Assembly: GCF_001194135.2 (NCBI RefSeq)
Contig: NC_068998.1
Coordinates: 32,720,295 to 32,784,294, forward strand
Reading direction: 5' to 3'
Source: Octopus bimaculoides
Taxonomy: Eukaryota
DNA length: 64,000 nt
Shown: piece after piece, positions 6,318-62,737 of the stretch
Layout: each line of letters begins with the position of its first letter
How positions within the stretch are numbered: the first letter of the stretch is position 1
Notes under the pieces: model-generated
What the model was told of the DNA's origin: nothing
What the model saw: the letters and a program-made list of their open reading frames with translations, nothing else
Databases searched by the model: none
Program-made: the position numbers and the translations under genes

Positions 6318-7195
6318 TAATGGCAGTGAAACATGGGCCGTGACTGCTGAAGACATGCATAGGCTCGCAAGGAATGAAGTCAGTATGCCCCGATGGATGT
6401 GTAATGTCAGTGTGCATACTAGACAGAGTGTAAATACCTTGAGAGAAAAGTTGAATCTAAGAAGCATCAGTTGTGATGTGCAAGAGAGACAATTGCGCTG
6501 GTATGGTCATGTGGCGAGAATGGATGAGGATAGCCGTGTGAAAAAGTGCCACAGCCTAGCGGTTGAGGGTACCTGTGGAAGAGGTAGACCCAGGAAGTCC
6601 TGGGATGAGGTGGTGAAGCACGACCTTTGAACATTAGGCCTCACCGAGGCAATGACTTGTGACCGAGACCTTTGGAAATATGCTGTGCGCGAGAAGACCC
6701 GGCAAGCCAAGTGAGACCTAAATCCAAGGCCTCTGCCAGGGGTGTAACCAGCCCACTTATGCATACCTTTCCTTCATTGGACACGAAACTCAGCTTGCGA
6801 AGACCTGTTGGGGCAAGCGAAAGTGAAATCGTGATGGCACCTGTGCCCAGCGTCGCCTTCCTGGCACTTGCGCTGGTAGCACGTGTAAAGACATTCGAGC
6901 AAGACCGTTGCCAGTGCCACTGGACTGGCTCTTGTGCAGGTGGCACATAAAATACATCATTTTGAGCGTGGCCATTGCCAGTACTGCCTGACTGGCCTTC
7001 GTGCTGGTGGCACGTAAAAGCACCCACTACACTCTCAGAGTGGTTGGCATTAGGAAGGGCATCCAGTTGTAGAAACTCTGCCAAATCAGATTGGAGCCTG
7101 GTGTAGCCTTCTGGTTCAGCAGTCCTCAGTCAAATCGTCCAACCCATGCTAGCATGGAAAGCGGACGTTAAACGATGATGATGATGATGATGATA
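6318..7195 (+). mobile_element. RTE-clade LINE 3' fragment with full 3' UTR and (GAT)n tail
   Basis: ORF 6340-6630 reads ...WYGHVARMDEDSRVKKC...RGRPRKSWDEVVKHDL. It ends CGGACGTTAAAC(GAT)n. Confidence 0.93.
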
Positions 7196-27147: not shown

Positions 27148-27604
27148 TAAAGGTGACGAGCTGGCAGAAATGTTAGCACCCCGGGCGAAATGCTTAGTGG
27201 TATTTTGTCTGTCTTTATGTTCTGAGTTCAAATTCCGCTGAGGTTCACTTTGCTTTTCATTCTTTTGGGGTCAATAAGTTAAGTACCAGTTGTGTACTGG
27301 GGTTGATCTAATTGACTGCCCCCCTCCCCCAAAATTTTGGGCCTTTTGCCTAGAATAGTAAAGATTATATTTATTTCTTTATTGCACATGGGGAGGGGGA
27401 TAAACATAGAGGGGACAAACAAGGACAGACAAAAGGATTAAGTTGATTACATCAACCCCAGTGTGTAACTGGTACTTATTTAATAGGCCCCGAAAGGATG
27501 AAAGGCAAAGTCGACCTTGGCAGTATTTGAACTCAGAACGTAATGGCAGATGGAATACTGCTAAGCATTTCACCTGGTGTGATTCTGATTCTGCCAGCTC
27601 ACCT
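27148..27604. mobile_element. Tail-to-tail inverted pair of family B SINEs (+27148-27370; -27380-27604)
   Basis: Both copies have the GAGCTGGCAGAA head and the AAGTACCAGTT/AACTGGTACTT core, in opposite orientation. Confidence 0.88.
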
Positions 27605-28072: not shown

Positions 28073-28275
28073 AAGATGGCAAGCTGCCAGAACTGCTAGC
28101 ATACTTAGAAGCATTTTGTCCATCTTTTTATTCTGAGTTCAAATTCCACCAAGGTCAACTTTGCCTTTCATCCTTTCAGGGCTGATAAAATAAGTACCAG
28201 TTGAGTACTGGGGTCAATGTAAATGACTTACCCTTCCCCCAAAATTGCTGGCCTTGTACCAAAATTTGAAACCAG
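28073..28275 (+). mobile_element. SINE family B
   Basis: Head GGCAAGCTGCCAGAA and core TTCTGAGTTCAAATTCC...AAGTACCAGTTGAGTACTGGGG. Confidence 0.85.
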
Positions 28276-46190: not shown

Positions 46191-46736
46191 TATAAAGAAT
46201 TATCTTTGCTACTACAATCTTGACAATTTGCTTTATTTATTTCAATGTGTGTAATCTAGATCTCATGTAACACATATATTCGGTGACCTAGTATCAAAAA
46301 TAATAAAGAAAACAAAGTCAAAAATTCTTTTTATTTCACATATTTCAAAATTTCAGGAGCATTGTGGAACCTGAAGATATAAATTTTAGAGTTTAGGGCT
46401 GGAGTAATATTATTTTATTATGGATTAGTGCTTTCATTCTTTATGGAATTTTTCAAAGATTGTGCTTTTTGACACAGTGTGGACTGAGAGGCTGCTAGTA
46501 TTAAAAAGAGTGTTAAATACTTATAGTACACAAATTGATCACTCCACTTCTCTGAAGCTACTGGATTTCTGTGTATATAAATATAAATAGATTCCTTACT
46601 CTTCTGGGCTTGGTCAAGTGATGTAGACACCTGACAAGGAACCGATAAAGTTCAAAAATCGATTAAGACTGTTCATAGTTTATTTCAATCTACAGAGAAA
46701 TAATTAAATTTGCCCTGTTTGTTTGTCTATGTAGGT

Positions 46737-46767
<31 letters not shown>

Positions 46768-50454: not shown

Positions 50455-51235
50455 GGTACTTTTTGGTTATCTCACCCCCATTAAAAAATTGCTATTAAAA
50501 ATTGGGGTTATCTCCCCACTAAAACTTGGGTTATCTCCTATATATAAAAACCACTTTTTTTCAAGTGAGCTTTATATATATGTCTTATTAATTTTTCTTG
50601 AGATTAATTTACCTTTAGAACATTTTAAGAACTAATATAAATACTATCTTCATAATATAAAGCAAACATCACAATTTTTTAAAGATGTATTGTAGAGTTT
50701 AATCTTAATAAATATTCACCATTTGAGAAAGCTTTTCGAAGATAGTTCAATCGGGAAGAGTCCATTTGCAAACACACATAATAGAAGATGATATAAGACC
50801 GGGTACTACCATCATAAGTGACAAATGGTCAGCATATAAAAATATAATTGATATTAGTCATTGTCAACATCTCACTGTGAATCATTCTCTACACTTTGTC
50901 AGTTCTACTAATGGAGCTCGCACCCAAAATATTGAAAGACTTTGGAAGAGTGCTAAAGAAAAAAATAAAAGACAGAATGGCATTCACAGAAGTCTACTGG
51001 ATTCATATATGTGCGAGTTTATGTGGCAACAAGAGATTGGATTAAAAGGGTTAGATCCTTTTGATTCAATACTTCAACACATTGTTGAGTTTTGGCCTCC
51101 TCTCAAATGATTTGTTATAAAAATATTATCAGGTTCAATACGATGTTTCATTTTTTCGCTTCTCATGTTTATTGTGTGTGTGTGTGTGTGTCTGTCTGTA
51201 TCTGTGAGTGTGTGTCTAATATGTTAATATATATA

Positions 51236-51284
<49 letters not shown>

Positions 51285-52341
51285 GAGAATATACGAAAAA
51301 ACAACAACAGACGAGGACAGGTGGTGTAAATAACAAAAGGATGTATTAGTATGACGCTCGGGAATACGGAAAGTCTTTGACGTTTCGAGCTACGCTCTTC
51401 AACAGAAAGAATACGGAGACAAGGAGAAAAACACGGAGAAAAAAAAAAAAAAGCACGGGGAAAAAAATTGAAATATATATATATATATATATTTATATAT
51501 AAAAAATTGAAATATATATATATATATTTATATATATAAATCTATATACATATATACATACATTTATGTATGTATGTAGCTATACCTTTATATATTTGTA
51601 TACAAGCATGCATTTTTATCTGTGTGTGCATATGTGCCTATAAGGATGTTGACATGATTTATGGTGTTTTTTTTTTTTTTGGTAAGGAGAGTATTTTGTC
51701 TTCAGATTTTATTACCTAGGGAGATTAAATACTGACCAGTTTTTCAACCTCGTCAATCACCAACACCGGACTGTGTGTGTAAATATGTGTATGTATGTAT
51801 GTATGTATGTATGTATGTATGTATGTATATGCATGTGTGTGTATGTTTGTATGTATATACGTATAAGTATACACGCACACCTTTCATCATCGTTGTTTCT
51901 CTTTCTTGTCATTTCTGTTCTTGTAACGGTCATTGTAGTTCACATTATTCTTAGTTTCATTTTCTTTGATTTCTTTCATTTTTCTTTTATCTCCCTAGGG
52001 AATTCGTTGACAAGCTTCTTTCATTTACTTCATTTCTTTTAAACTTATTTAAGATACACCCTCGTATTTTTTTCCTTGTCTGGCTTGTGGGCTGCTTTAA
52101 CTTATAGGCCTTGGGCCACCGTCCTGGCTAACCTCACCTCTTCTCAGTGGGACTGTAAATATGTGTGTGTGTGTATGTGTGTGTGTGTGTGTGTTTGTGT
52201 GTGTGTGCGTTTGCAAATGGACTCAGCTCTTGAAAAAAGTGATGGTTTCATACATGGGAGATAACCCAAGATTTTAGAGGGGAAATAACCCTATTTTTGT
52301 AATGGCAATTTTTTAATGGGGGTGAAATGACCAAAAAGTAC
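50455..52341 (+). mobile_element. Merlin (IS1595-like) DNA transposon, internally deleted, with ~115-bp TIRs
   Basis: ORF 50766-51110 reads IRPGTTIISDKWSAY...HLTVNHSLHFV...TQNIERLWKSAK...YMCEFMW (DDE_Tnp_IS1595-like). TIR 50455-50575 GGTACTTTTTGGTTATCTCACCCCC is mirrored at 52225-52341. Confidence 0.88.
51374..51410 (-). ncRNA. Minimal type I hammerhead motif (A6U variant, loop-less palindromic stem III) in a short Penelope-type tail repeat at ~51281-51450
   Basis: UCUUU-CUGUUGA-A GAGC GUA GCUC-GAAACGUC/AAAGA: 5-bp stem I and 4-bp stem II. Confidence 0.65.
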
Positions 52342-52569: not shown

Positions 52570-55500
52570 ACACTAAATTGCTTGTCCCATGGTTAATCTA
52601 GAAGTGCGTCCCCCAGGAGAGTGCTAGCCTGGGGTTGAAAAGTCATCCACTGGCACAAACTCTTCTCTAAATATGAACCTGGATGATCACTTAAACAGGA
52701 ACTGCCCCAACTCGAGCCCTCCAAGTTCACTACCACAGCCATCACAGAAATAAAAATGTAAGAGGATGAAATTGACTTGAGAAGAGCATACAGAAGTAAT
52801 ATACTTTTATTACTATGCATTAGGTAGGCCATCAGAAAAGAAACACACTGCACACTCTTATCAAAGATGGAGAACATGAAATCAAGGCAGCAGACTCTAT
52901 TTGGATGAAAACAAGTTAGCAAATGTTAGGAAGGATATCTTCAGAAATAAAAGACTCACACATAGTGAAATAACTGTGATCAAACACCCAACAGAAAATG
53001 GCCTAAATATAAGACAGAAAAGAAATAAAGAATCAGATGAAGAGAGCAACCCTCCCCAAGTCTCAATTGAAAGACTGTCACATGACCAGAATGCATAAAT
53101 GTCTAAAGAAATAAATTGTAATGAACCTGATAAAGATAGTGAGTAAAGTGTTAATGAACCAGTATTTGAAGACCACTCATTTGCTGAAGAACACAGTGAG
53201 TCTATGACAGAAATAAAGCATCAAATCCTTAATAAGCTTGCAGTTGTAAGACATGCCAATATGCATGATAGAGAACCACTTCATAAACTCTTAAATACCA
53301 TCTAAAATAAAAAAAACAGATTAAAATTGGCAACTATGTAACAGAATAAATCATACAAGAACTAAAACCTGATCTCATTGAGTTAAATGAAATTATTTAC
53401 ACATCTGCTAAGGCAATTGAAAGCAGTTGTAAGCTCCCCCACCAAAAAAAAAATAAATAAATAAAAACCAAAGAAATACAAACCTGGCAAGAATTTCAAA
53501 CTGGAGAAGTAAAATTGAAAAAGCGATTGAAATAATGAGACGTGGAAATAATTTGTTGAAACGATGTAAGATCCAGAAAAGGAAGAAAGATGAAAAGAAA
53601 ATATAGATTTTCACCAAGTGAAGAACTGCTTTCAACAAAAGAAACGGTGCAACAAAAAGTCTAAGCAAACACTCACAGAATACAAAGATATGTGCCGAGA
53701 AATAAGTTTTATAAGCAAAATAAGCTGTTCACATCCAATGTGAAAACATTCTTCAGAGAAATAGCGAAAGAAAAATTAATTGTTGAAGACCCCACTCTTA
53801 TGGAAGAAGTTGAAGACTTTTGGAAAAATATTTGGAGTGATGAAAAGACATACAATGAAAATGTAGACTGGATTAGACATACAGAAGAATCCTATAAAAA
53901 TTTACCAAAACAAGCATGGGAAGACATCGCAATAACAGACCTAAGAAGGACACTCATGAAGGTTCATAAGTGGAAATCCCTTGGTAAAGATAGGGTGCCA
54001 AATTTCTGGCTTGCATTGCTCCTGTGCGCACATGAAAAATTAGTTCAGCTATTCAATGAGATTATGAGAGATCTTACGAAAACACCTGATTGATTAGCAA
54101 GTGTTATCACTTACCTATTTCCAAAGAATAATGGAACCAGATTTCCCCAAAACTTTTGACCCATAGCCTGTCTATCTACCACATATAAAATTTTAACATC
54201 CATCCTCTTGGAGAAAACATATGCCTTTATAGAACAGAATGATATTTTCCCCACTGAACAAAAAAGTGTTGAAGGGGCTCATATGGACGCAAAGATCAGC
54301 TTCTAATCAATAGCATGATCCTTGAGAACTGTGATAACAAATGCAGAAATCTCAGTTCCACATAGATTGATTTGACAGCATATTGCATTCATGGATCTTG
54401 AAATCACTGGATATCTTCAAAATTTCTCCAGTGATTTCAAACTTCTTGAAGCACAATATGTCAGTGTGGAATATGAATCTCCAACTTTACCACTCTAATG
54501 GAGTACTAAATACAAACAATATTAATATCAACTGTGGTATTTTCCAAGGTGATACACTTTCACCTCTAATTTTTTGCATAACCCTAATACCCCTTACAAG
54601 TGAAGCTAACAGAACAGGGTATGGGTATATAACTGACTACAAGAAAATAAACTATCCATTCTATATGGATGACTTAAAACTCTATAGCAAAGATGATAAT
54701 GAGCTTGAAAGTCTATTGTGTATTGTGAAAGCACTCAGTGATGATATTGGGATGGAATTTGACCTTGATAAAGGTGCCAAGGCTACTTTCTAGAAAGAGA
54801 AATTGAAGACCTCACATTCAGTGGTGTTAGATGTTGGCAAAGTCATAAAACAACTTGAGCAGGAACAAACTTACAAATGCCTCAGAATAAATGAGGGCTC
54901 TGGCATTCAGCATGCAAGCATGAAAAAGAAGATCAAGAAGGAATGTTACAGAAGAGTCCCAAAATTTGAGCTAAATGTACGCAACAAGGATTTAGCCTAA
55001 ATTCCTTAGTAGTTCCAGTTGTTATTTCCAGTTTCAATTGAACTGGAATATGATTGAAATAATGAAGATTGACAGGAAAATACATAAGCTGCTGATTTGC
55101 AATAAGATGCACCACTCAAAGGCAGATGCAGATCAACTTTACCTTCCCAGAGCCCAAGGAGGTCAAGGCTTGGTCCAATTTGACTGGCCAATATTTCGAA
55201 ACATCTAAGGACTGGATACTAAAAGTTGTTAAAAACTATGAGAGACATAAGAAACTTCATTCTGTCATGAAGAAGACCAAAAAATTTACTAGCGAGTGGA
55301 TGTATAATATCCAGATTGAACGACATAATGGAAATGCAGCTGCTGTTGTTGCAAAGAAGGTGAAATCAATGGCAAAGCAAAACGCGTTTGAATAATTGAT
55401 GATAGGTGAGAACAAAAACCTCTGCATGGCGAATATGTGACCCATAGCAAACAAACTGATGTAGACCAGAAGTACACCCTATCAGTGGCTATGAAGCTGA

Positions 55501-60093: not shown

Positions 60094-60137
<44 letters not shown>

Positions 60138-60332
60138 CCTTTCTACTAAGGGCACAAGACCTGAAATATTGACTAGTCGATTACATTGACTCCAGTGTCT
60201 CACTGGTACTTAATTTATTGACCCCGAAAGGATGAAAGGCAAAGCCGACATTGGTGGAGTTTGAACTCAAAATGTAAAGATGGATGAAATGCTGCTAAGC
60301 ATTTTGATTGGTATGCTAACCATTCTGCCAGT
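59767..60332. mobile_element. R4/Dong 3' end (+59767-60085), (TAA)n tract, family B SINE (-60125-60332)
   Basis: KHKDLDIEICRTWQLKTKTIPVVVGALGTIKK...QKIVLTSTAHIFRMFLSI*, then (ATA)n, then the SINE reverse complement. Confidence 0.88.
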
Positions 60333-61045: not shown

Positions 61046-61234
61046 GTGGGGCCTCATATCAGTGAAATGAGGGTGGGGTTGGTGTGCATTGATGCCATTG
61101 AGAGGTAGGCCCCAAAATGGCATGCATTCTCTCCTAATGACTCCATACACTTGCTGGCTTCCAGTATGTGGAACCTTCAACTGGTAGCACTTGTATGTGC
61201 AAGTTGTTTGCAAAACATATAATGATGATAATAA

Positions 61235-61432
61235 TGTTTTCAAATATGGGCACAAGGCCGCAAATTCAGAGAAGGGTAAGTTGATTACATTGACCCCAAT
61301 GATTAACTGCTACTCTTTTTATTGACCCAGAAGGGCATGAAAGGTAAAGTCTACCTTAGCAGAACTTGAACTCAGAAAGTAAAGCTGAACAAATGCCGCT
61401 AAGCTAACGGCTTTGCTAGCTTGCCACCTTAA
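61235..61432 (-). mobile_element. SINE family B
   Basis: Reverse-complement core and head (GCTAGCTTGCCACC). Confidence 0.8.
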
Positions 61433-61477: not shown

Positions 61478-62250
61478 TAAAGGCCAGACATTATACCGAA
61501 GGATTTCAAACAAATAGCATACCTCCTCATTGATATGATTGTCCCAATCGACATAAATGTATCTGTCAAGATTTACCAAAAACTGAGCAAGTATAAAGAT
61601 CTTGAAATAGAAATTGATAAAATGTGGAACCTCAAGACTAAAACAATACCTGTTGTCATAGATGCCCTAGGAATGATAGCAAAAGGGGCTGAATGCTACC
61701 TAGCTCTGGTACCAGAAAATCCAAAAATAGTGCTCATGGGAACTGCCCGCATCTTATGTAAAATATTGTCTATGTAATTCCCAAAATAATTTAATCCGTA
61801 AACAGTGTCAAAATACTTTTAAATGTACATAACAATAAACACCTTTTATTGTCATCTTAACATCAGACTATCAAATAACTTTTAAAACAAACTTCTAATT
61901 TACTTATGTTTTGACAAACATTCTATAGAACAATACTCTGTGCAAAACTAAATATATGGCACCCTAGTGATAACACCAATCTGCTCTTCTAACTTGTTGT
62001 CTCTTGAGGTCTCTGGGTGAGACTTGGAGTCAACTTATACAAATACAAAGCAAAAACCAAACATATAACAACAACTGCAACAATGAAAATGATAATCCAT
62101 TCTACTATTGGCACAAGGCCTGACATTTGAGGGTCAGAGGCTAGTTGATTACATTGATTGCAGTGCTCAGCTGGTACTTATTTCATCAACCTCAAATGGG
62201 TGAAAGGCAAAGTTAACCTTGGTGAAATTTGAACTCAAAAAGTAAAATCA
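61478..62250. mobile_element. R4/Dong 3' end (+61478-62090) flanked by TAA/CAA tracts, then a family B SINE (-62095-62250)
   Basis: RPDII...LLIDMIVPIDINVSVKIYQKLSKYKDLEIEIDKMWNLKTKTIPVVIDALG...ILCKILSM*. Confidence 0.88.
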
Positions 62251-62251
62251 G

Positions 62252-62706
62252 ACACAGAATGTGCATCGTTAGCCAACCGGAGGAGATGTCTTGATTCCAT
62301 ATGTTATGATTTCGTATCGCTACTGTTTACATCTTGCTCAAAGATTTAATATAGCTTTTATCTCCTTTTTCGAGATCAGCAATGATTCATCGCTGGAAAA
62401 AGCATAAAGTATTTTGTGAGTGGGGTGAGTTTTCATCACTAGCTGATGATTAACACATGCTGAGGATGGGTAACCACCCAGAAACTTGAGTCCGTGTGTA
62501 TGCTGTAAGGCTAGGGGTGGGAGCAATGACCTCCCCTCACAAATACTAATTGAACACAGAATGTGCGTCATTAGCCAGCTGGAGGAGATGTCTTCCTGGG
62601 GCTATAAATATCAGCAGCACTGTCCTGTATAGGACACCACACTTGGTTGGCAATTGTATGTTACTATTCCGTATCGCTACTGTTTGCATCATGCTCAGAG
62701 TTTTAG

Positions 62707-62708
<2 letters not shown>
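62252..62708 (+). mobile_element. Partial tandem repeat (~1.4 units, 301-356 nt) carrying one hammerhead; candidate non-LTR retrozyme or Penelope pLTR
   Basis: 62252-62348 and 62553-62708 align in two blocks (37/41 and ~46/54 identical). Copy 2 has ~55 extra nt including GCTATAAATA. The hammerhead lies between the copies. Confidence 0.7.
62453..62499 (+). ncRNA. Minimal type I hammerhead ribozyme with a fully canonical core; predicted cleavage after 62492 (GUC)
   Basis: ACACAUG-CUGAGGA-UGGGU AACC ACCCA-GAAA CU UG AG UC/CGUGUGU: 7-bp stem I, 5-bp stem II, self-complementary stem III ACUUGAGU. Confidence 0.85.

Positions 62709-62737
<29 letters not shown>

What the first reader, a model, noticed from the sequence alone, without database searches (positions are those of the whole stretch)
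62252..62708. Candidate cephalopod retrozyme: an intact hammerhead inside a ~300-356 nt partial tandem repeat
Seen: two direct-repeat blocks 301 nt apart flank a hammerhead with a complete core (CUGAGGA...GAAA...GUC), 7-bp stem I and 5-bp stem II, and there is no coding capacity. Established: metazoan non-LTR retrozymes are non-coding tandem arrays of few-hundred-nt monomers with minimal type I hammerheads that self-cleave into monomers and circularise; Penelope pLTRs also carry such hammerheads in partial tandems. The stem III here (ACUUGAGU, self-pairing with G.U wobbles) fits cleavage as a dimer. Inference: this is a fossil or member of a retrozyme or Penelope-derived family in an octopus-like genome; I know of no description of it there. 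The 10.1-11.1 pair is U-A rather than the usual G-C.
Basis: partly seen in the sequence, partly recalled or inferred. Interest (0 to 1): 0.85.

Follow-up and report, generated by a model that had tools for sequence, protein, structure and literature searches.

The report
Fossil hammerhead retroelement in octopus DNA
A real hammerhead ribozyme motif sits in a short, non-coding, one-and-a-third-unit retroelement insert next to a (TA)n microsatellite in an octopus genome; it is an ordinary, probably dead member of the known Penelope/retrozyme class, not a new kind of element.

Summary
Direct repeats A/A' (62252-62292 / 62554-62594, 90% identical) and B/B' (62300-62353 / 62657-62710, 85%) flank a complete type-I hammerhead at 62453-62499. 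Its cleavage site lies between 62492 and 62493. It is the only descriptor hit in the window, against about 1e-4 expected by chance.

The locus carries one hammerhead in about 1.3-1.5 units. TRF does not call it a tandem repeat, so it fails the working definition of an active non-LTR retrozyme. No RT/GIY-YIG ORF lies within 10 kb upstream, so it is not a pLTR of an intact Penelope copy.

The insert ends exactly at a (TA)15 array, with an ATATA at the internal unit junction. That fits the AT/(TA)n target preference reported for Penelope-like elements.

Three more short non-coding hammerhead elements abutting (TA)n turned up: two in this window and one in a 20-kb Octopus vulgaris locus. Two of them are copies of one ~245-nt family with shared ends.

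Best reading: a fossil insert of a short Penelope-dependent hammerhead element. The copy number of this particular family could not be measured, because no octopus genome can be searched by DNA with these tools. It is a new member of a known kind, of modest interest.

The parts
62249..62353 (+). Upstream partial unit (blocks A 62252-62292 and B 62300-62353). It is a 5'-truncated copy of the 3' part of the element and carries no hammerhead.
   Evidence: Direct repeats D2/D3, BLAST self-hits, pairwise alignment.
62349..62353 (+). ATATA at the junction between the partial unit and the full unit. It corresponds to the start of the (TA)15 tail that follows B'.
   Evidence: Alignment of copy 1 and copy 2; sequence.
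62354..62710 (+). Full unit: X 62354-62553 (unique, carries the hammerhead), A' 62554-62594, an extra 55-62 nt 62595-62656, and B' 62657-62710.
   Evidence: GC is 0.44 and there is no ORF with homologues.
62453..62499 (+). Type-I hammerhead motif with a complete core, U10.1-A11.1, and a helix III of 2 bp plus a UUGA loop. The predicted cleavage site is between 62492 and 62493.
   Evidence: It is the only descriptor hit in the window. Chance expectation is about 1e-4 per window. Rfam RF00163 gives a full-length sub-threshold alignment at 15.3 bits. The dimer cofold forms the 8-bp intermolecular helix III.
62408..62548 (+). Long imperfect hairpin (rod) that extends helix I, with the hammerhead at its tip.
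   Evidence: The + strand folds at -54.3 kcal/mol with z=-4.29, and 0 of 200 shuffles fold as well. The - strand gives z=-2.33.
62707..62737 (.). (TA)15 microsatellite directly abutting the 3' end of the element. It is the presumed target and tail.
   Evidence: TRF reports 62707-62735, 14.5 copies, 100% matches; sequence.
62076..62254 (+). Flanking copy of an abundant SINE-like repeat, cut off about 65 nt before the family's usual 3' end where the element begins. This is context, not part of the element.
   Evidence: At least 10 copies occur in the window on both strands. The alignment of 10 copies shows that the others continue with a different tail. Blocks A/A' are not significantly similar to that tail.

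Best explanation
This is a decayed insertion of a short (about 300-360 nt), non-coding, hammerhead-bearing retroelement of the Penelope/retrozyme lineage. In practice it is a 'solo' or monomer-type derivative.

Inferred mechanism: an RNA carrying the hammerhead at the tip of a long hairpin was copied by the reverse transcriptase/GIY-YIG endonuclease of an autonomous Penelope-like element. Priming occurred at a nicked (TA)n microsatellite. Copying ran for more than one unit, either round a circular template or by a jump to a second template. This left [5'-truncated unit A-B]-ATATA-[full unit X-A'-B']-(TA)15.

The hammerhead has a weak helix III and would need a second copy to cleave as a dimer. 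This locus has only one, so by itself it cannot release a unit-length RNA. The repeats are 10-15% diverged, which suggests an old, inactive copy.

Shown here: the motif, the repeats, the hairpin, the (TA)n junctions, the lack of any nearby ORF, and the presence of sister elements. Inferred: the mobilising enzyme, the template form, and the inactivity.
For: - The hammerhead is far beyond chance and is the only hit in the window.
- The hairpin around it is strand-specific, z=-4.29 on + against -2.33 on -.
- The 3' end abuts (TA)15, and the internal unit junction is ATATA.
- Penelope-like elements form partial tandems and prefer (TA)n or AT-rich targets (PMC8557442, PMC11167929).
- No RVT/GIY-YIG ORF was found in 52-64 kb. 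The only hit is a non-LTR RVT_1 at about 54.4-54.8 kb. There is no GIY-YIG pattern anywhere in the window.
- Class-level support: every palindromic-helix-III hammerhead hit in 84 kb of octopus DNA lies in a short non-coding element within 300 nt of a TA array, and only 15-19% of the sequence is that close to one.
- The O. vulgaris element L004 19664-19421 (244 nt, intact hammerhead, (TA)n on both sides, hairpin z=-3.04) has a 75-80% identical copy at window 46495-46740. The two share the same 5' start and the same 3' (TA)n end. So discrete short hammerhead families with defined ends do exist in Octopus.
- The hammerhead architecture (helix I 7 bp, helix II 5 bp, helix III 2 bp plus a 4-nt near-palindromic loop) matches the 'canonical metazoan type I' description better than the Penelope min-HHR (PMC4209133).
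Against: - No second copy of this particular family was found. The octopus genome could not be searched by DNA, so 'family' is inferred by analogy.
- The Rfam score is well below gathering.
- U10.1-A11.1 departs from the highly conserved G10.1-C11.1 (PMC4209133). From my own knowledge, this should lower activity.
- In the anole Penelope element, reverse transcription starts about 90 nt 3' of the hammerhead cut site (PMC11167929). A severely 5'-truncated autonomous copy would therefore look much the same.
- The whole unit is not unusually structured, z=-1.1 to -1.6.
- TA arrays are common here, 19 in 64 kb.
Confidence: 0.55

Rival explanations
1. It is simply the 5'-truncated terminal piece (the pLTR/ORF-start region that carries the hammerhead) of an autonomous Penelope-like element. 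It was inserted in the usual partial tandem and is not a dedicated non-autonomous family.
For: - Most genomic min-hammerheads occur as single motifs 'probably related to truncated PLEs' (PMC4209133).
- Penelope insertions end about 90-120 nt past the hammerhead (PMC11167929). The elements here end 72-218 nt past it.
- Partial tandems and AT/(TA)n targets are Penelope traits (PMC8557442).
- Penelope is abundant in coleoids (PMC8967140).
Against: - No ORF or start codon opens at or after the hammerhead; there are stops within 10 codons.
- The hammerhead lacks the min-HHR traits: a bulged base after A9, G10.1-C11.1, and a long helix II (against PMC4209133).
- The sister family has the same 5' end in two unrelated loci, which random 5' truncation would not give.
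- No Penelope ORF lies anywhere in the window.
Confidence: 0.3
2. It is a live non-LTR retrozyme locus. A tandem array is transcribed, cleaved at successive hammerheads into about 300-nt monomers, and ligated into circular RNA.
For: Unit size, GC content, lack of coding and a type-I hammerhead with dimer-type helix III all match the family description (PMC7229834).
Against: - There is only one hammerhead.
- There are only about 1.3-1.5 units, and TRF is negative.
- The repeated blocks do not include the ribozyme.
- The blocks are 10-15% diverged.
- The monomer catalytic fold (-8.7 kcal/mol) is less stable than an inactive alternative (-14.8 kcal/mol).
Confidence: 0.04
3. It is a chance hammerhead-like string inside an unrelated local duplication.
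For: - About 4.5 motifs of this quality are expected by chance in a 2.7-Gb genome.
- Rfam is sub-threshold.
- No other copy was found.
Against: - The self-complementary helix III was not part of the descriptor. Requiring it lowers the chance expectation about 50-fold (108 to 2 hits).
- The motif sits at the tip of a strand-specific hairpin, z=-4.29.
- The exact (TA)n junction is the same as in three other hammerhead elements.
Confidence: 0.03
4. It is a composite SINE-plus-hammerhead element, like Schistosoma Sm-alpha, transcribed from the upstream SINE's promoter.
For: A SINE-like copy (62076-62254) lies immediately upstream in the same orientation.
Against: - None of the other 9 or more SINE copies in the window carries this tail, and they continue with a different 3' sequence.
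- A/A' are not significantly similar to the SINE.
- T-runs at 62357-62371 lie before the hammerhead. From my own knowledge, these would stop pol III.
Confidence: 0.03

Closest known systems
Metazoan non-LTR retrozymes (Cervera & de la Pena 2020, PMC7229834; Li et al. 2026 preprint 10.64898/2026.07.22.740005), specifically their dispersed 'monomer/solo' derivatives
   Same: - Non-coding unit of 150-450 nt with GC below 45-50%.
- Type-I hammerhead with a weak helix III and a palindromic loop that favours dimer cleavage.
- A more-than-unit-length insert, as expected from a circular or concatenated template.
- Presumed dependence on Penelope-like elements.
   Different: - One hammerhead only.
- No array that TRF can detect.
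- U10.1-A11.1 instead of G-C.
- Copy number and circular RNA were not shown.
- The unit ends in a (TA)n tail, a feature the retrozyme reviews do not report (PMC7761336 says no conserved motif points to the mobilising element).
Pseudo-LTRs and min-hammerheads of Penelope-like elements (Cervera & de la Pena 2014, PMC4209133; Craig et al. 2021, PMC8557442; Frangieh et al. 2024, PMC11167929)
   Same: - Partial-tandem layout.
- AT-rich or (TA)n insertion site.
- Hammerhead some 70-220 nt from the 3' end of the insert.
- Dimer-type ribozyme.
   Different: - No RT/GIY-YIG ORF nearby.
- The hammerhead is in the unique part, not in both repeats.
- No bulged base after A9, helix II of 5 rather than 6-8 bp, and helix I of 7 rather than 4-5 bp.
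- A different element in this window (51284-51472, minus strand) does show the min-HHR traits.
Amphibian satellite 2 / Schistosoma Sm-alpha type-I hammerheads
   Same: Short helix III with a palindromic loop, predicted dimer cleavage, and a SINE-sized non-coding carrier.
   Different: No sequence similarity, no pol III head, and no long array.

Membership tests
Hammerhead ribozyme, type I | Conserved core C3 U4 G5 A6 N7 G8 A9 / G12 A13 A14 / A15.1-U16.1 H17, with helices I, II and III and helix I open | tested here: met
   Descriptor scan and direct reading. Rfam RF00163 aligns over model positions 1-45.
Hammerhead ribozyme, type I | Score at or above the Rfam gathering threshold | tested here: not met
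   15.3 bits against 34. No hit in the window-wide scans.
Hammerhead ribozyme, type I | G10.1-C11.1 pair (highly conserved) | tested here: not met
   The pair is U10.1-A11.1 (62467/62480).
Hammerhead ribozyme, type I | Self-cleavage activity | not testable with these tools
   This needs in vitro transcription of monomer and dimer constructs.
Non-LTR retrozyme (active) | Tandem repeat with at least 2 consecutive units, each with a complete type-I hammerhead (10.64898/2026.07.22.740005) | tested here: not met
   One hammerhead, TRF negative, and about 1.3-1.5 units.
Non-LTR retrozyme | Non-coding unit of about 150-450 nt with low GC | tested here: met
   Units of 302 and 357 nt with GC 0.41-0.44. 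ORFs are at most 99 aa. The 77-aa ORF has no homologue and the 99-aa ORF has no exact record.
Non-LTR retrozyme | Multi-copy family in the genome | not testable with these tools
   No eukaryotic genome can be searched by DNA. There was no second copy in 64 + 20 kb and 0 hits in the viral, metagenome and prokaryote collections. A sister family does have 2 copies.
Non-LTR retrozyme | Expressed as small circular RNA joined at the cleavage site | not testable with these tools
   No RNA-seq data are available.
Non-LTR retrozyme | Highly self-paired predicted RNA | tested here: inconclusive
   The hairpin around the hammerhead gives z=-4.29, but the whole unit gives only z=-1.1 to -1.6.
Penelope-like element pLTR | Flanks or adjoins an RT + GIY-YIG ORF | tested here: not met
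   A Pfam scan of all ORFs of at least 55 aa in 52-64 kb finds only a non-LTR RVT_1 and a weak zf-RVT. There is no GIY-YIG pattern in the window. Only 1.3 kb downstream could be seen.
Penelope-like element pLTR | Hammerhead present in both terminal repeats | tested here: not met
   Repeats A/B and A'/B' lack it. It lies in the unique segment X.
Penelope-like element pLTR | min-HHR traits: unpaired base between 9 and 10.1, helix II of 6-8 bp, helix I of 4-5 bp (PMC4209133) | tested here: not met
   No bulge, helix II of 5 bp, helix I of 7 bp.
Penelope-like element (insertion signature) | Partial tandem copies and insertion at (TA)n or AT-rich DNA (PMC8557442, PMC11167929) | tested here: met
   The layout is [A-B]-ATATA-[X-A'-B']-(TA)15. 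The same (TA)n junction occurs in three other hammerhead elements.
Penelope-like element | Sequence homology to the pLTR of an octopus Penelope consensus | not testable with these tools
   No octopus Penelope sequence could be reached. The supplement of PMC8557442 is not held.

The most novel reading that the evidence does not exclude
Octopus genomes carry several families of SINE-sized, non-coding hammerhead elements with defined ends. They spread mostly as single units into (TA)n microsatellites using Penelope enzymes. Their ribozymes tolerate non-G-C 10.1-11.1 pairs (U-A here, G.U in the O. vulgaris family). The (TA)n tail would be the first sequence signature that ties animal retrozyme-type elements to the target preference of a particular mobilising enzyme, and these elements might seed some of the very numerous TA arrays.
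Probability: 0.35. Interest if true: 0.45.

Novelty: new member of a known kind. Interest (0 to 1): 0.3.

Why it matters
If confirmed genome-wide, it would add cephalopods to the animals known to carry hammerhead-bearing Penelope/retrozyme elements. It would also give a clean target-site signature, (TA)n, that links these non-coding elements to Penelope-type integration. That is useful for repeat annotation of octopus genomes, where much of the repeat fraction is short and unclassified, and for choosing candidates for circular-RNA searches. It does not change the current picture of how such elements work.

Tried and rejected
1. Reaching other copies through proteins.
- The 77-aa ORF across the hammerhead (minus strand) has no homologue among 5.8 billion proteins.
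- Exact look-ups of two window ORFs found nothing.

2. DNA pattern scans. The exact 26-mer and a degenerate 33-mer of the hammerhead gave 0 hits in the viral, JGI metagenome and prokaryote genome collections. None of these holds octopus DNA, so this says nothing about copy number.

3. Sampling the same genome through a LINE RT.
- The best hits were only 64% identical.
- Loci L001 and L002 shared just the RT with the window and no SINE. L003 could not be compared. I set all three aside as other organisms.

4. A second search with an RTE-like ORF gave the Octopus names and one 20-kb O. vulgaris locus. No further octopus proteins were available for look-up.

5. Are blocks A/A' the tail of the flanking SINE, and does the SINE continue after the (TA)15 (a long target duplication)? 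Local alignments are no better than shuffles, so I rejected both as unsupported.

6. Homology between the 62-kb element and the other hammerhead elements. It is not significant: score 41 against shuffles of 29 +/- 5, maximum 55, and there are no BLAST hits.

I redid it with concatenated ORFs.

8. ARAGORN finds no tRNA-like heads in the SINEs.

9. Bacterial promoter/terminator scan: uninformative.

Full report
**What is there**

The sequence at 62249-62737 has the layout [A 62252-62292][7 nt][B 62300-62353] - X 62354-62553 - [A' 62554-62594][55-62 extra nt][B' 62657-62710] - (TA)15 62707-62737. A and A' are 90% identical. B and B' are 85% identical.

Segment X holds a complete type-I hammerhead at 62453-62499: ACACAUG / CUGAGGA / UGGGU-AACC-ACCCA / GAAA / CUUGAG / UC / CGUGUGU. 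C17 is at 62492.
- a 7-bp stem I;
- a 5-bp stem II;
- U10.1-A11.1;
- a self-complementary ACUUGAGU with two G.U pairs.

**Is it more than chance?**

A structural descriptor run over both strands of the window finds this site and nothing else. None of 400 simulated windows had a hit. In 2.4 Gb of random sequence of the same composition, the expectation is 0.0011 per window for a relaxed descriptor and 1e-4 for a motif as good as this one.

On a whole 2.7-Gb genome that still allows about 4.5 chance motifs, so the motif alone is not proof. Three further features were not in the descriptor:
- Helix III is self-complementary. Requiring this cut the random hits from 108 to 2.
- The motif caps a 140-nt imperfect hairpin that is much more stable than shuffles on the + strand (z=-4.29, 0/200) and less so on the - strand (z=-2.33).
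- The element ends exactly at a TA microsatellite.

Rfam is weak here. There is no hit at gathering score or at E<=10 on 900 nt. Only a 73-nt search gives a full-length alignment to Hammerhead_1, at 15.3 bits against a threshold of 34.

**Ribozyme properties**

As a monomer, the catalytic fold (-8.7 kcal/mol) loses to an inactive fold (-14.8 kcal/mol). Two copies are predicted to pair through an 8-bp intermolecular helix III. This is the behaviour described for most metazoan type-I hammerheads, which have a short helix III capped by a palindromic loop (PMC4209133, PMC7229834).

The U-A pair at 10.1-11.1 departs from the 'highly conserved' G-C (PMC4209133). From my own knowledge, G10.1 helps bind a metal ion, so activity is probably reduced.

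**Surroundings**

Upstream, 62076-62254 is one of at least 10 copies of a SINE-like repeat. In the other copies the SINE continues with a different tail, so here it is cut off where the element begins. Blocks A/A' are not detectably SINE-derived.

All ORFs of at least 55 aa between 52 and 64 kb give only a non-LTR RVT_1 (about 54.4-54.8 kb) and a weak zf-RVT. No GIY-YIG pattern occurs anywhere in the window. So there is no adjacent Penelope ORF. Only 1.3 kb is visible downstream.

**Whose genome**

The only named homologues of a window RTE-like ORF are from Octopus bimaculoides and O. vulgaris. The O. vulgaris locus L004 (GCA_951406725.2, OX597824.1) shares many repeat families with the window at 70-96% identity. 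'Octopus-like genome' is therefore supported.

**Sister elements (found in passing, but they bear on the verdict)**

1. L004 minus strand 19664-19421 is a 244-nt non-coding element with (TA)n on both sides.
   - It carries an intact hammerhead, ACCU/CUGAUGA/GAACC-AAAUAA-GGUUU/GAAA/AUCGAU/UA/AGGU.
   - Helix III plus its loop is the perfect palindrome AAUCGAUU.
   - It also sits at the tip of a long hairpin, z=-3.04.
   - This locus was not chosen for ribozymes. The chance expectation for such a hit in 20 kb is 4e-5.
2. Window 46495-46740 (+) is a 75-80% identical copy of that element.
   - It has the same 5' start (CTGCT[T/A]GTATT) and the same 3' end running into a TA array.
   - Its core is dead (G8 to A, G12 to A).
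   - Shared ends at two unrelated loci indicate a discrete short family, not random truncation.
3. Window minus strand 51472-51284 is a ~190-nt element between two TA arrays.
   - It carries a Penelope-style minimal hammerhead, UCUUU/CUGUUGA/A/GAGC-GUA-GCUC/GAAA/CG/UC/AAAGA.
   - It has one core mismatch, the bulged base after A9, and G10.1-C11.1.
   - The null expectation is 0.0037 per 168 kb.

All palindromic-helix-III hits in the 84 kb lie within 300 nt of a TA array, although only 15-19% of the sequence does. Short hammerhead elements tied to (TA)n are therefore common in Octopus.

**How it most likely arose**

Penelope-like elements form partial tandems and insert preferentially into (TA)n or AT-rich DNA (PMC8557442). 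The purified anole enzyme nicks AT-rich DNA and starts reverse transcription inside the RNA, about 90 nt past the hammerhead cut site. Hammerhead cleavage is not needed for insertion in vitro (PMC11167929).

Non-LTR retrozymes are now argued to be non-autonomous derivatives of Penelope pLTRs. They exist as monomers, dimers and multimers (10.64898/2026.07.22.740005).

The layout here is [5'-truncated unit]-ATATA-[full unit]-(TA)15. It fits priming at a TA array and copying for more than one unit, either round a circle or by a template jump. The insert does not begin or end at the hammerhead cut site, so the template was not a cleaved linear monomer primed at its end. These mechanistic steps are inference.

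**What it is not**

By the working definition of an active retrozyme (a TRF-detected tandem with at least 2 consecutive complete hammerheads), this locus fails. It is also not a pLTR pair. The ribozyme is outside the repeated blocks and no ORF is near.

I cannot separate 'member of a dedicated non-autonomous family' from 'severely truncated end of an autonomous Penelope'. No octopus genome or Penelope consensus can be searched by DNA with these tools. I lean to the former for two reasons: the hammerhead architecture, and the sister family with defined ends.

**Novelty**

I found no paper describing hammerheads or retrozymes in cephalopods. The one paper that mentions both topics says cephalopod Naiad elements are old remnants and that Naiads lack canonical hammerheads (PMC8557442).

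Hammerheads are described as universal in canonical Penelope-like elements, and Penelope is among the enriched repeat families of coleoids (PMC8967140). The find is therefore an expected extension: a new member of a known kind, of modest interest. The (TA)n tail shared by four elements is the most useful by-product.

Noticed in passing
window 46495-46740 (+), with TA array 46737-46754: A degenerate copy (75-80% identical) of a ~245-nt hammerhead element. Its intact relative lies in O. vulgaris (L004 19664-19421, minus strand). The two share the same 5' start and the same 3' (TA)n end. The hammerhead core is dead here (G8 to A, G12 to A).
   Followed up: partly
window 51284-51472 (-), hammerhead-like motif 51374-51410; TA arrays 51250-51281 and 51474-51526: A ~190-nt element between two TA arrays with a Penelope-style minimal hammerhead. 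It has a bulged A after A9, G10.1-C11.1, an ACGU helix III and one core mismatch (A6 to U). A 14-nt piece of its 5' end (TATTTCAATTTTTT) is duplicated among the upstream TA repeats, which recalls the Penelope 'tail'.
   Followed up: partly
L004 19421-19664 (-), O. vulgaris OX597824.1: A 244-nt non-coding element flanked by (TA)n on both sides. It has an intact type-I hammerhead with G10.1.U11.1 and the perfect palindrome AAUCGAUU, at the tip of a hairpin with z=-3.04. No Rfam hammerhead model matches it, even at E<=10.
   Followed up: partly
window 62076-62254 and at least 9 other sites (e.g. 60120-60278, 61221-61383, 27206-27386, 28126-28270): An abundant ~200-260-nt SINE-like repeat (head ...GGCACAAGGCC..., tail ...GCTAAC.ATTCTGCCAGCT.GCCACCTT) on both strands, roughly one per 6 kb. 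ARAGORN sees no tRNA-like head.
   Followed up: partly
window, 19 sites (e.g. 2326, 5513, 7856, 12117, 15015, 16787, 35140, 40957, 48428): (TA)n arrays of 7 or more units are very frequent, about one per 3.4 kb. Four of them abut hammerhead elements. Whether such elements seed or merely target the arrays is open.
   Followed up: no
window 1-~720 (+), 50766-51110 (+), 53692-54793 (+), 955-1341 and 6340-6630 (+): Other transposon remnants: a mariner-type transposase ORF at the window start, an ISXO2/IS1595-like DDE fragment, a non-LTR RT (RVT_1), and two copies of an RTE-like RT C-terminus. The Pfam result covers only the 52-64 kb part; the rest is my reading of the translations.
   Followed up: partly
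L004 17500-18100: A 184-nt tandem repeat (about 3 units, 92-100% identical) in the O. vulgaris locus, apparently built from a SINE-like sequence.
   Followed up: no
L001, L002, L003 (ENA ERZ25067570, ERZ25067561, ERZ25067906): Long contigs in ENA 'metagenome' assemblies carry a LINE RT that is 60-64% identical in protein to the window's. For L001 and L002 the RT DNA is 66-71% identical and no octopus SINE is present. They probably come from other invertebrate hosts. L003 could not be compared.
   Followed up: no
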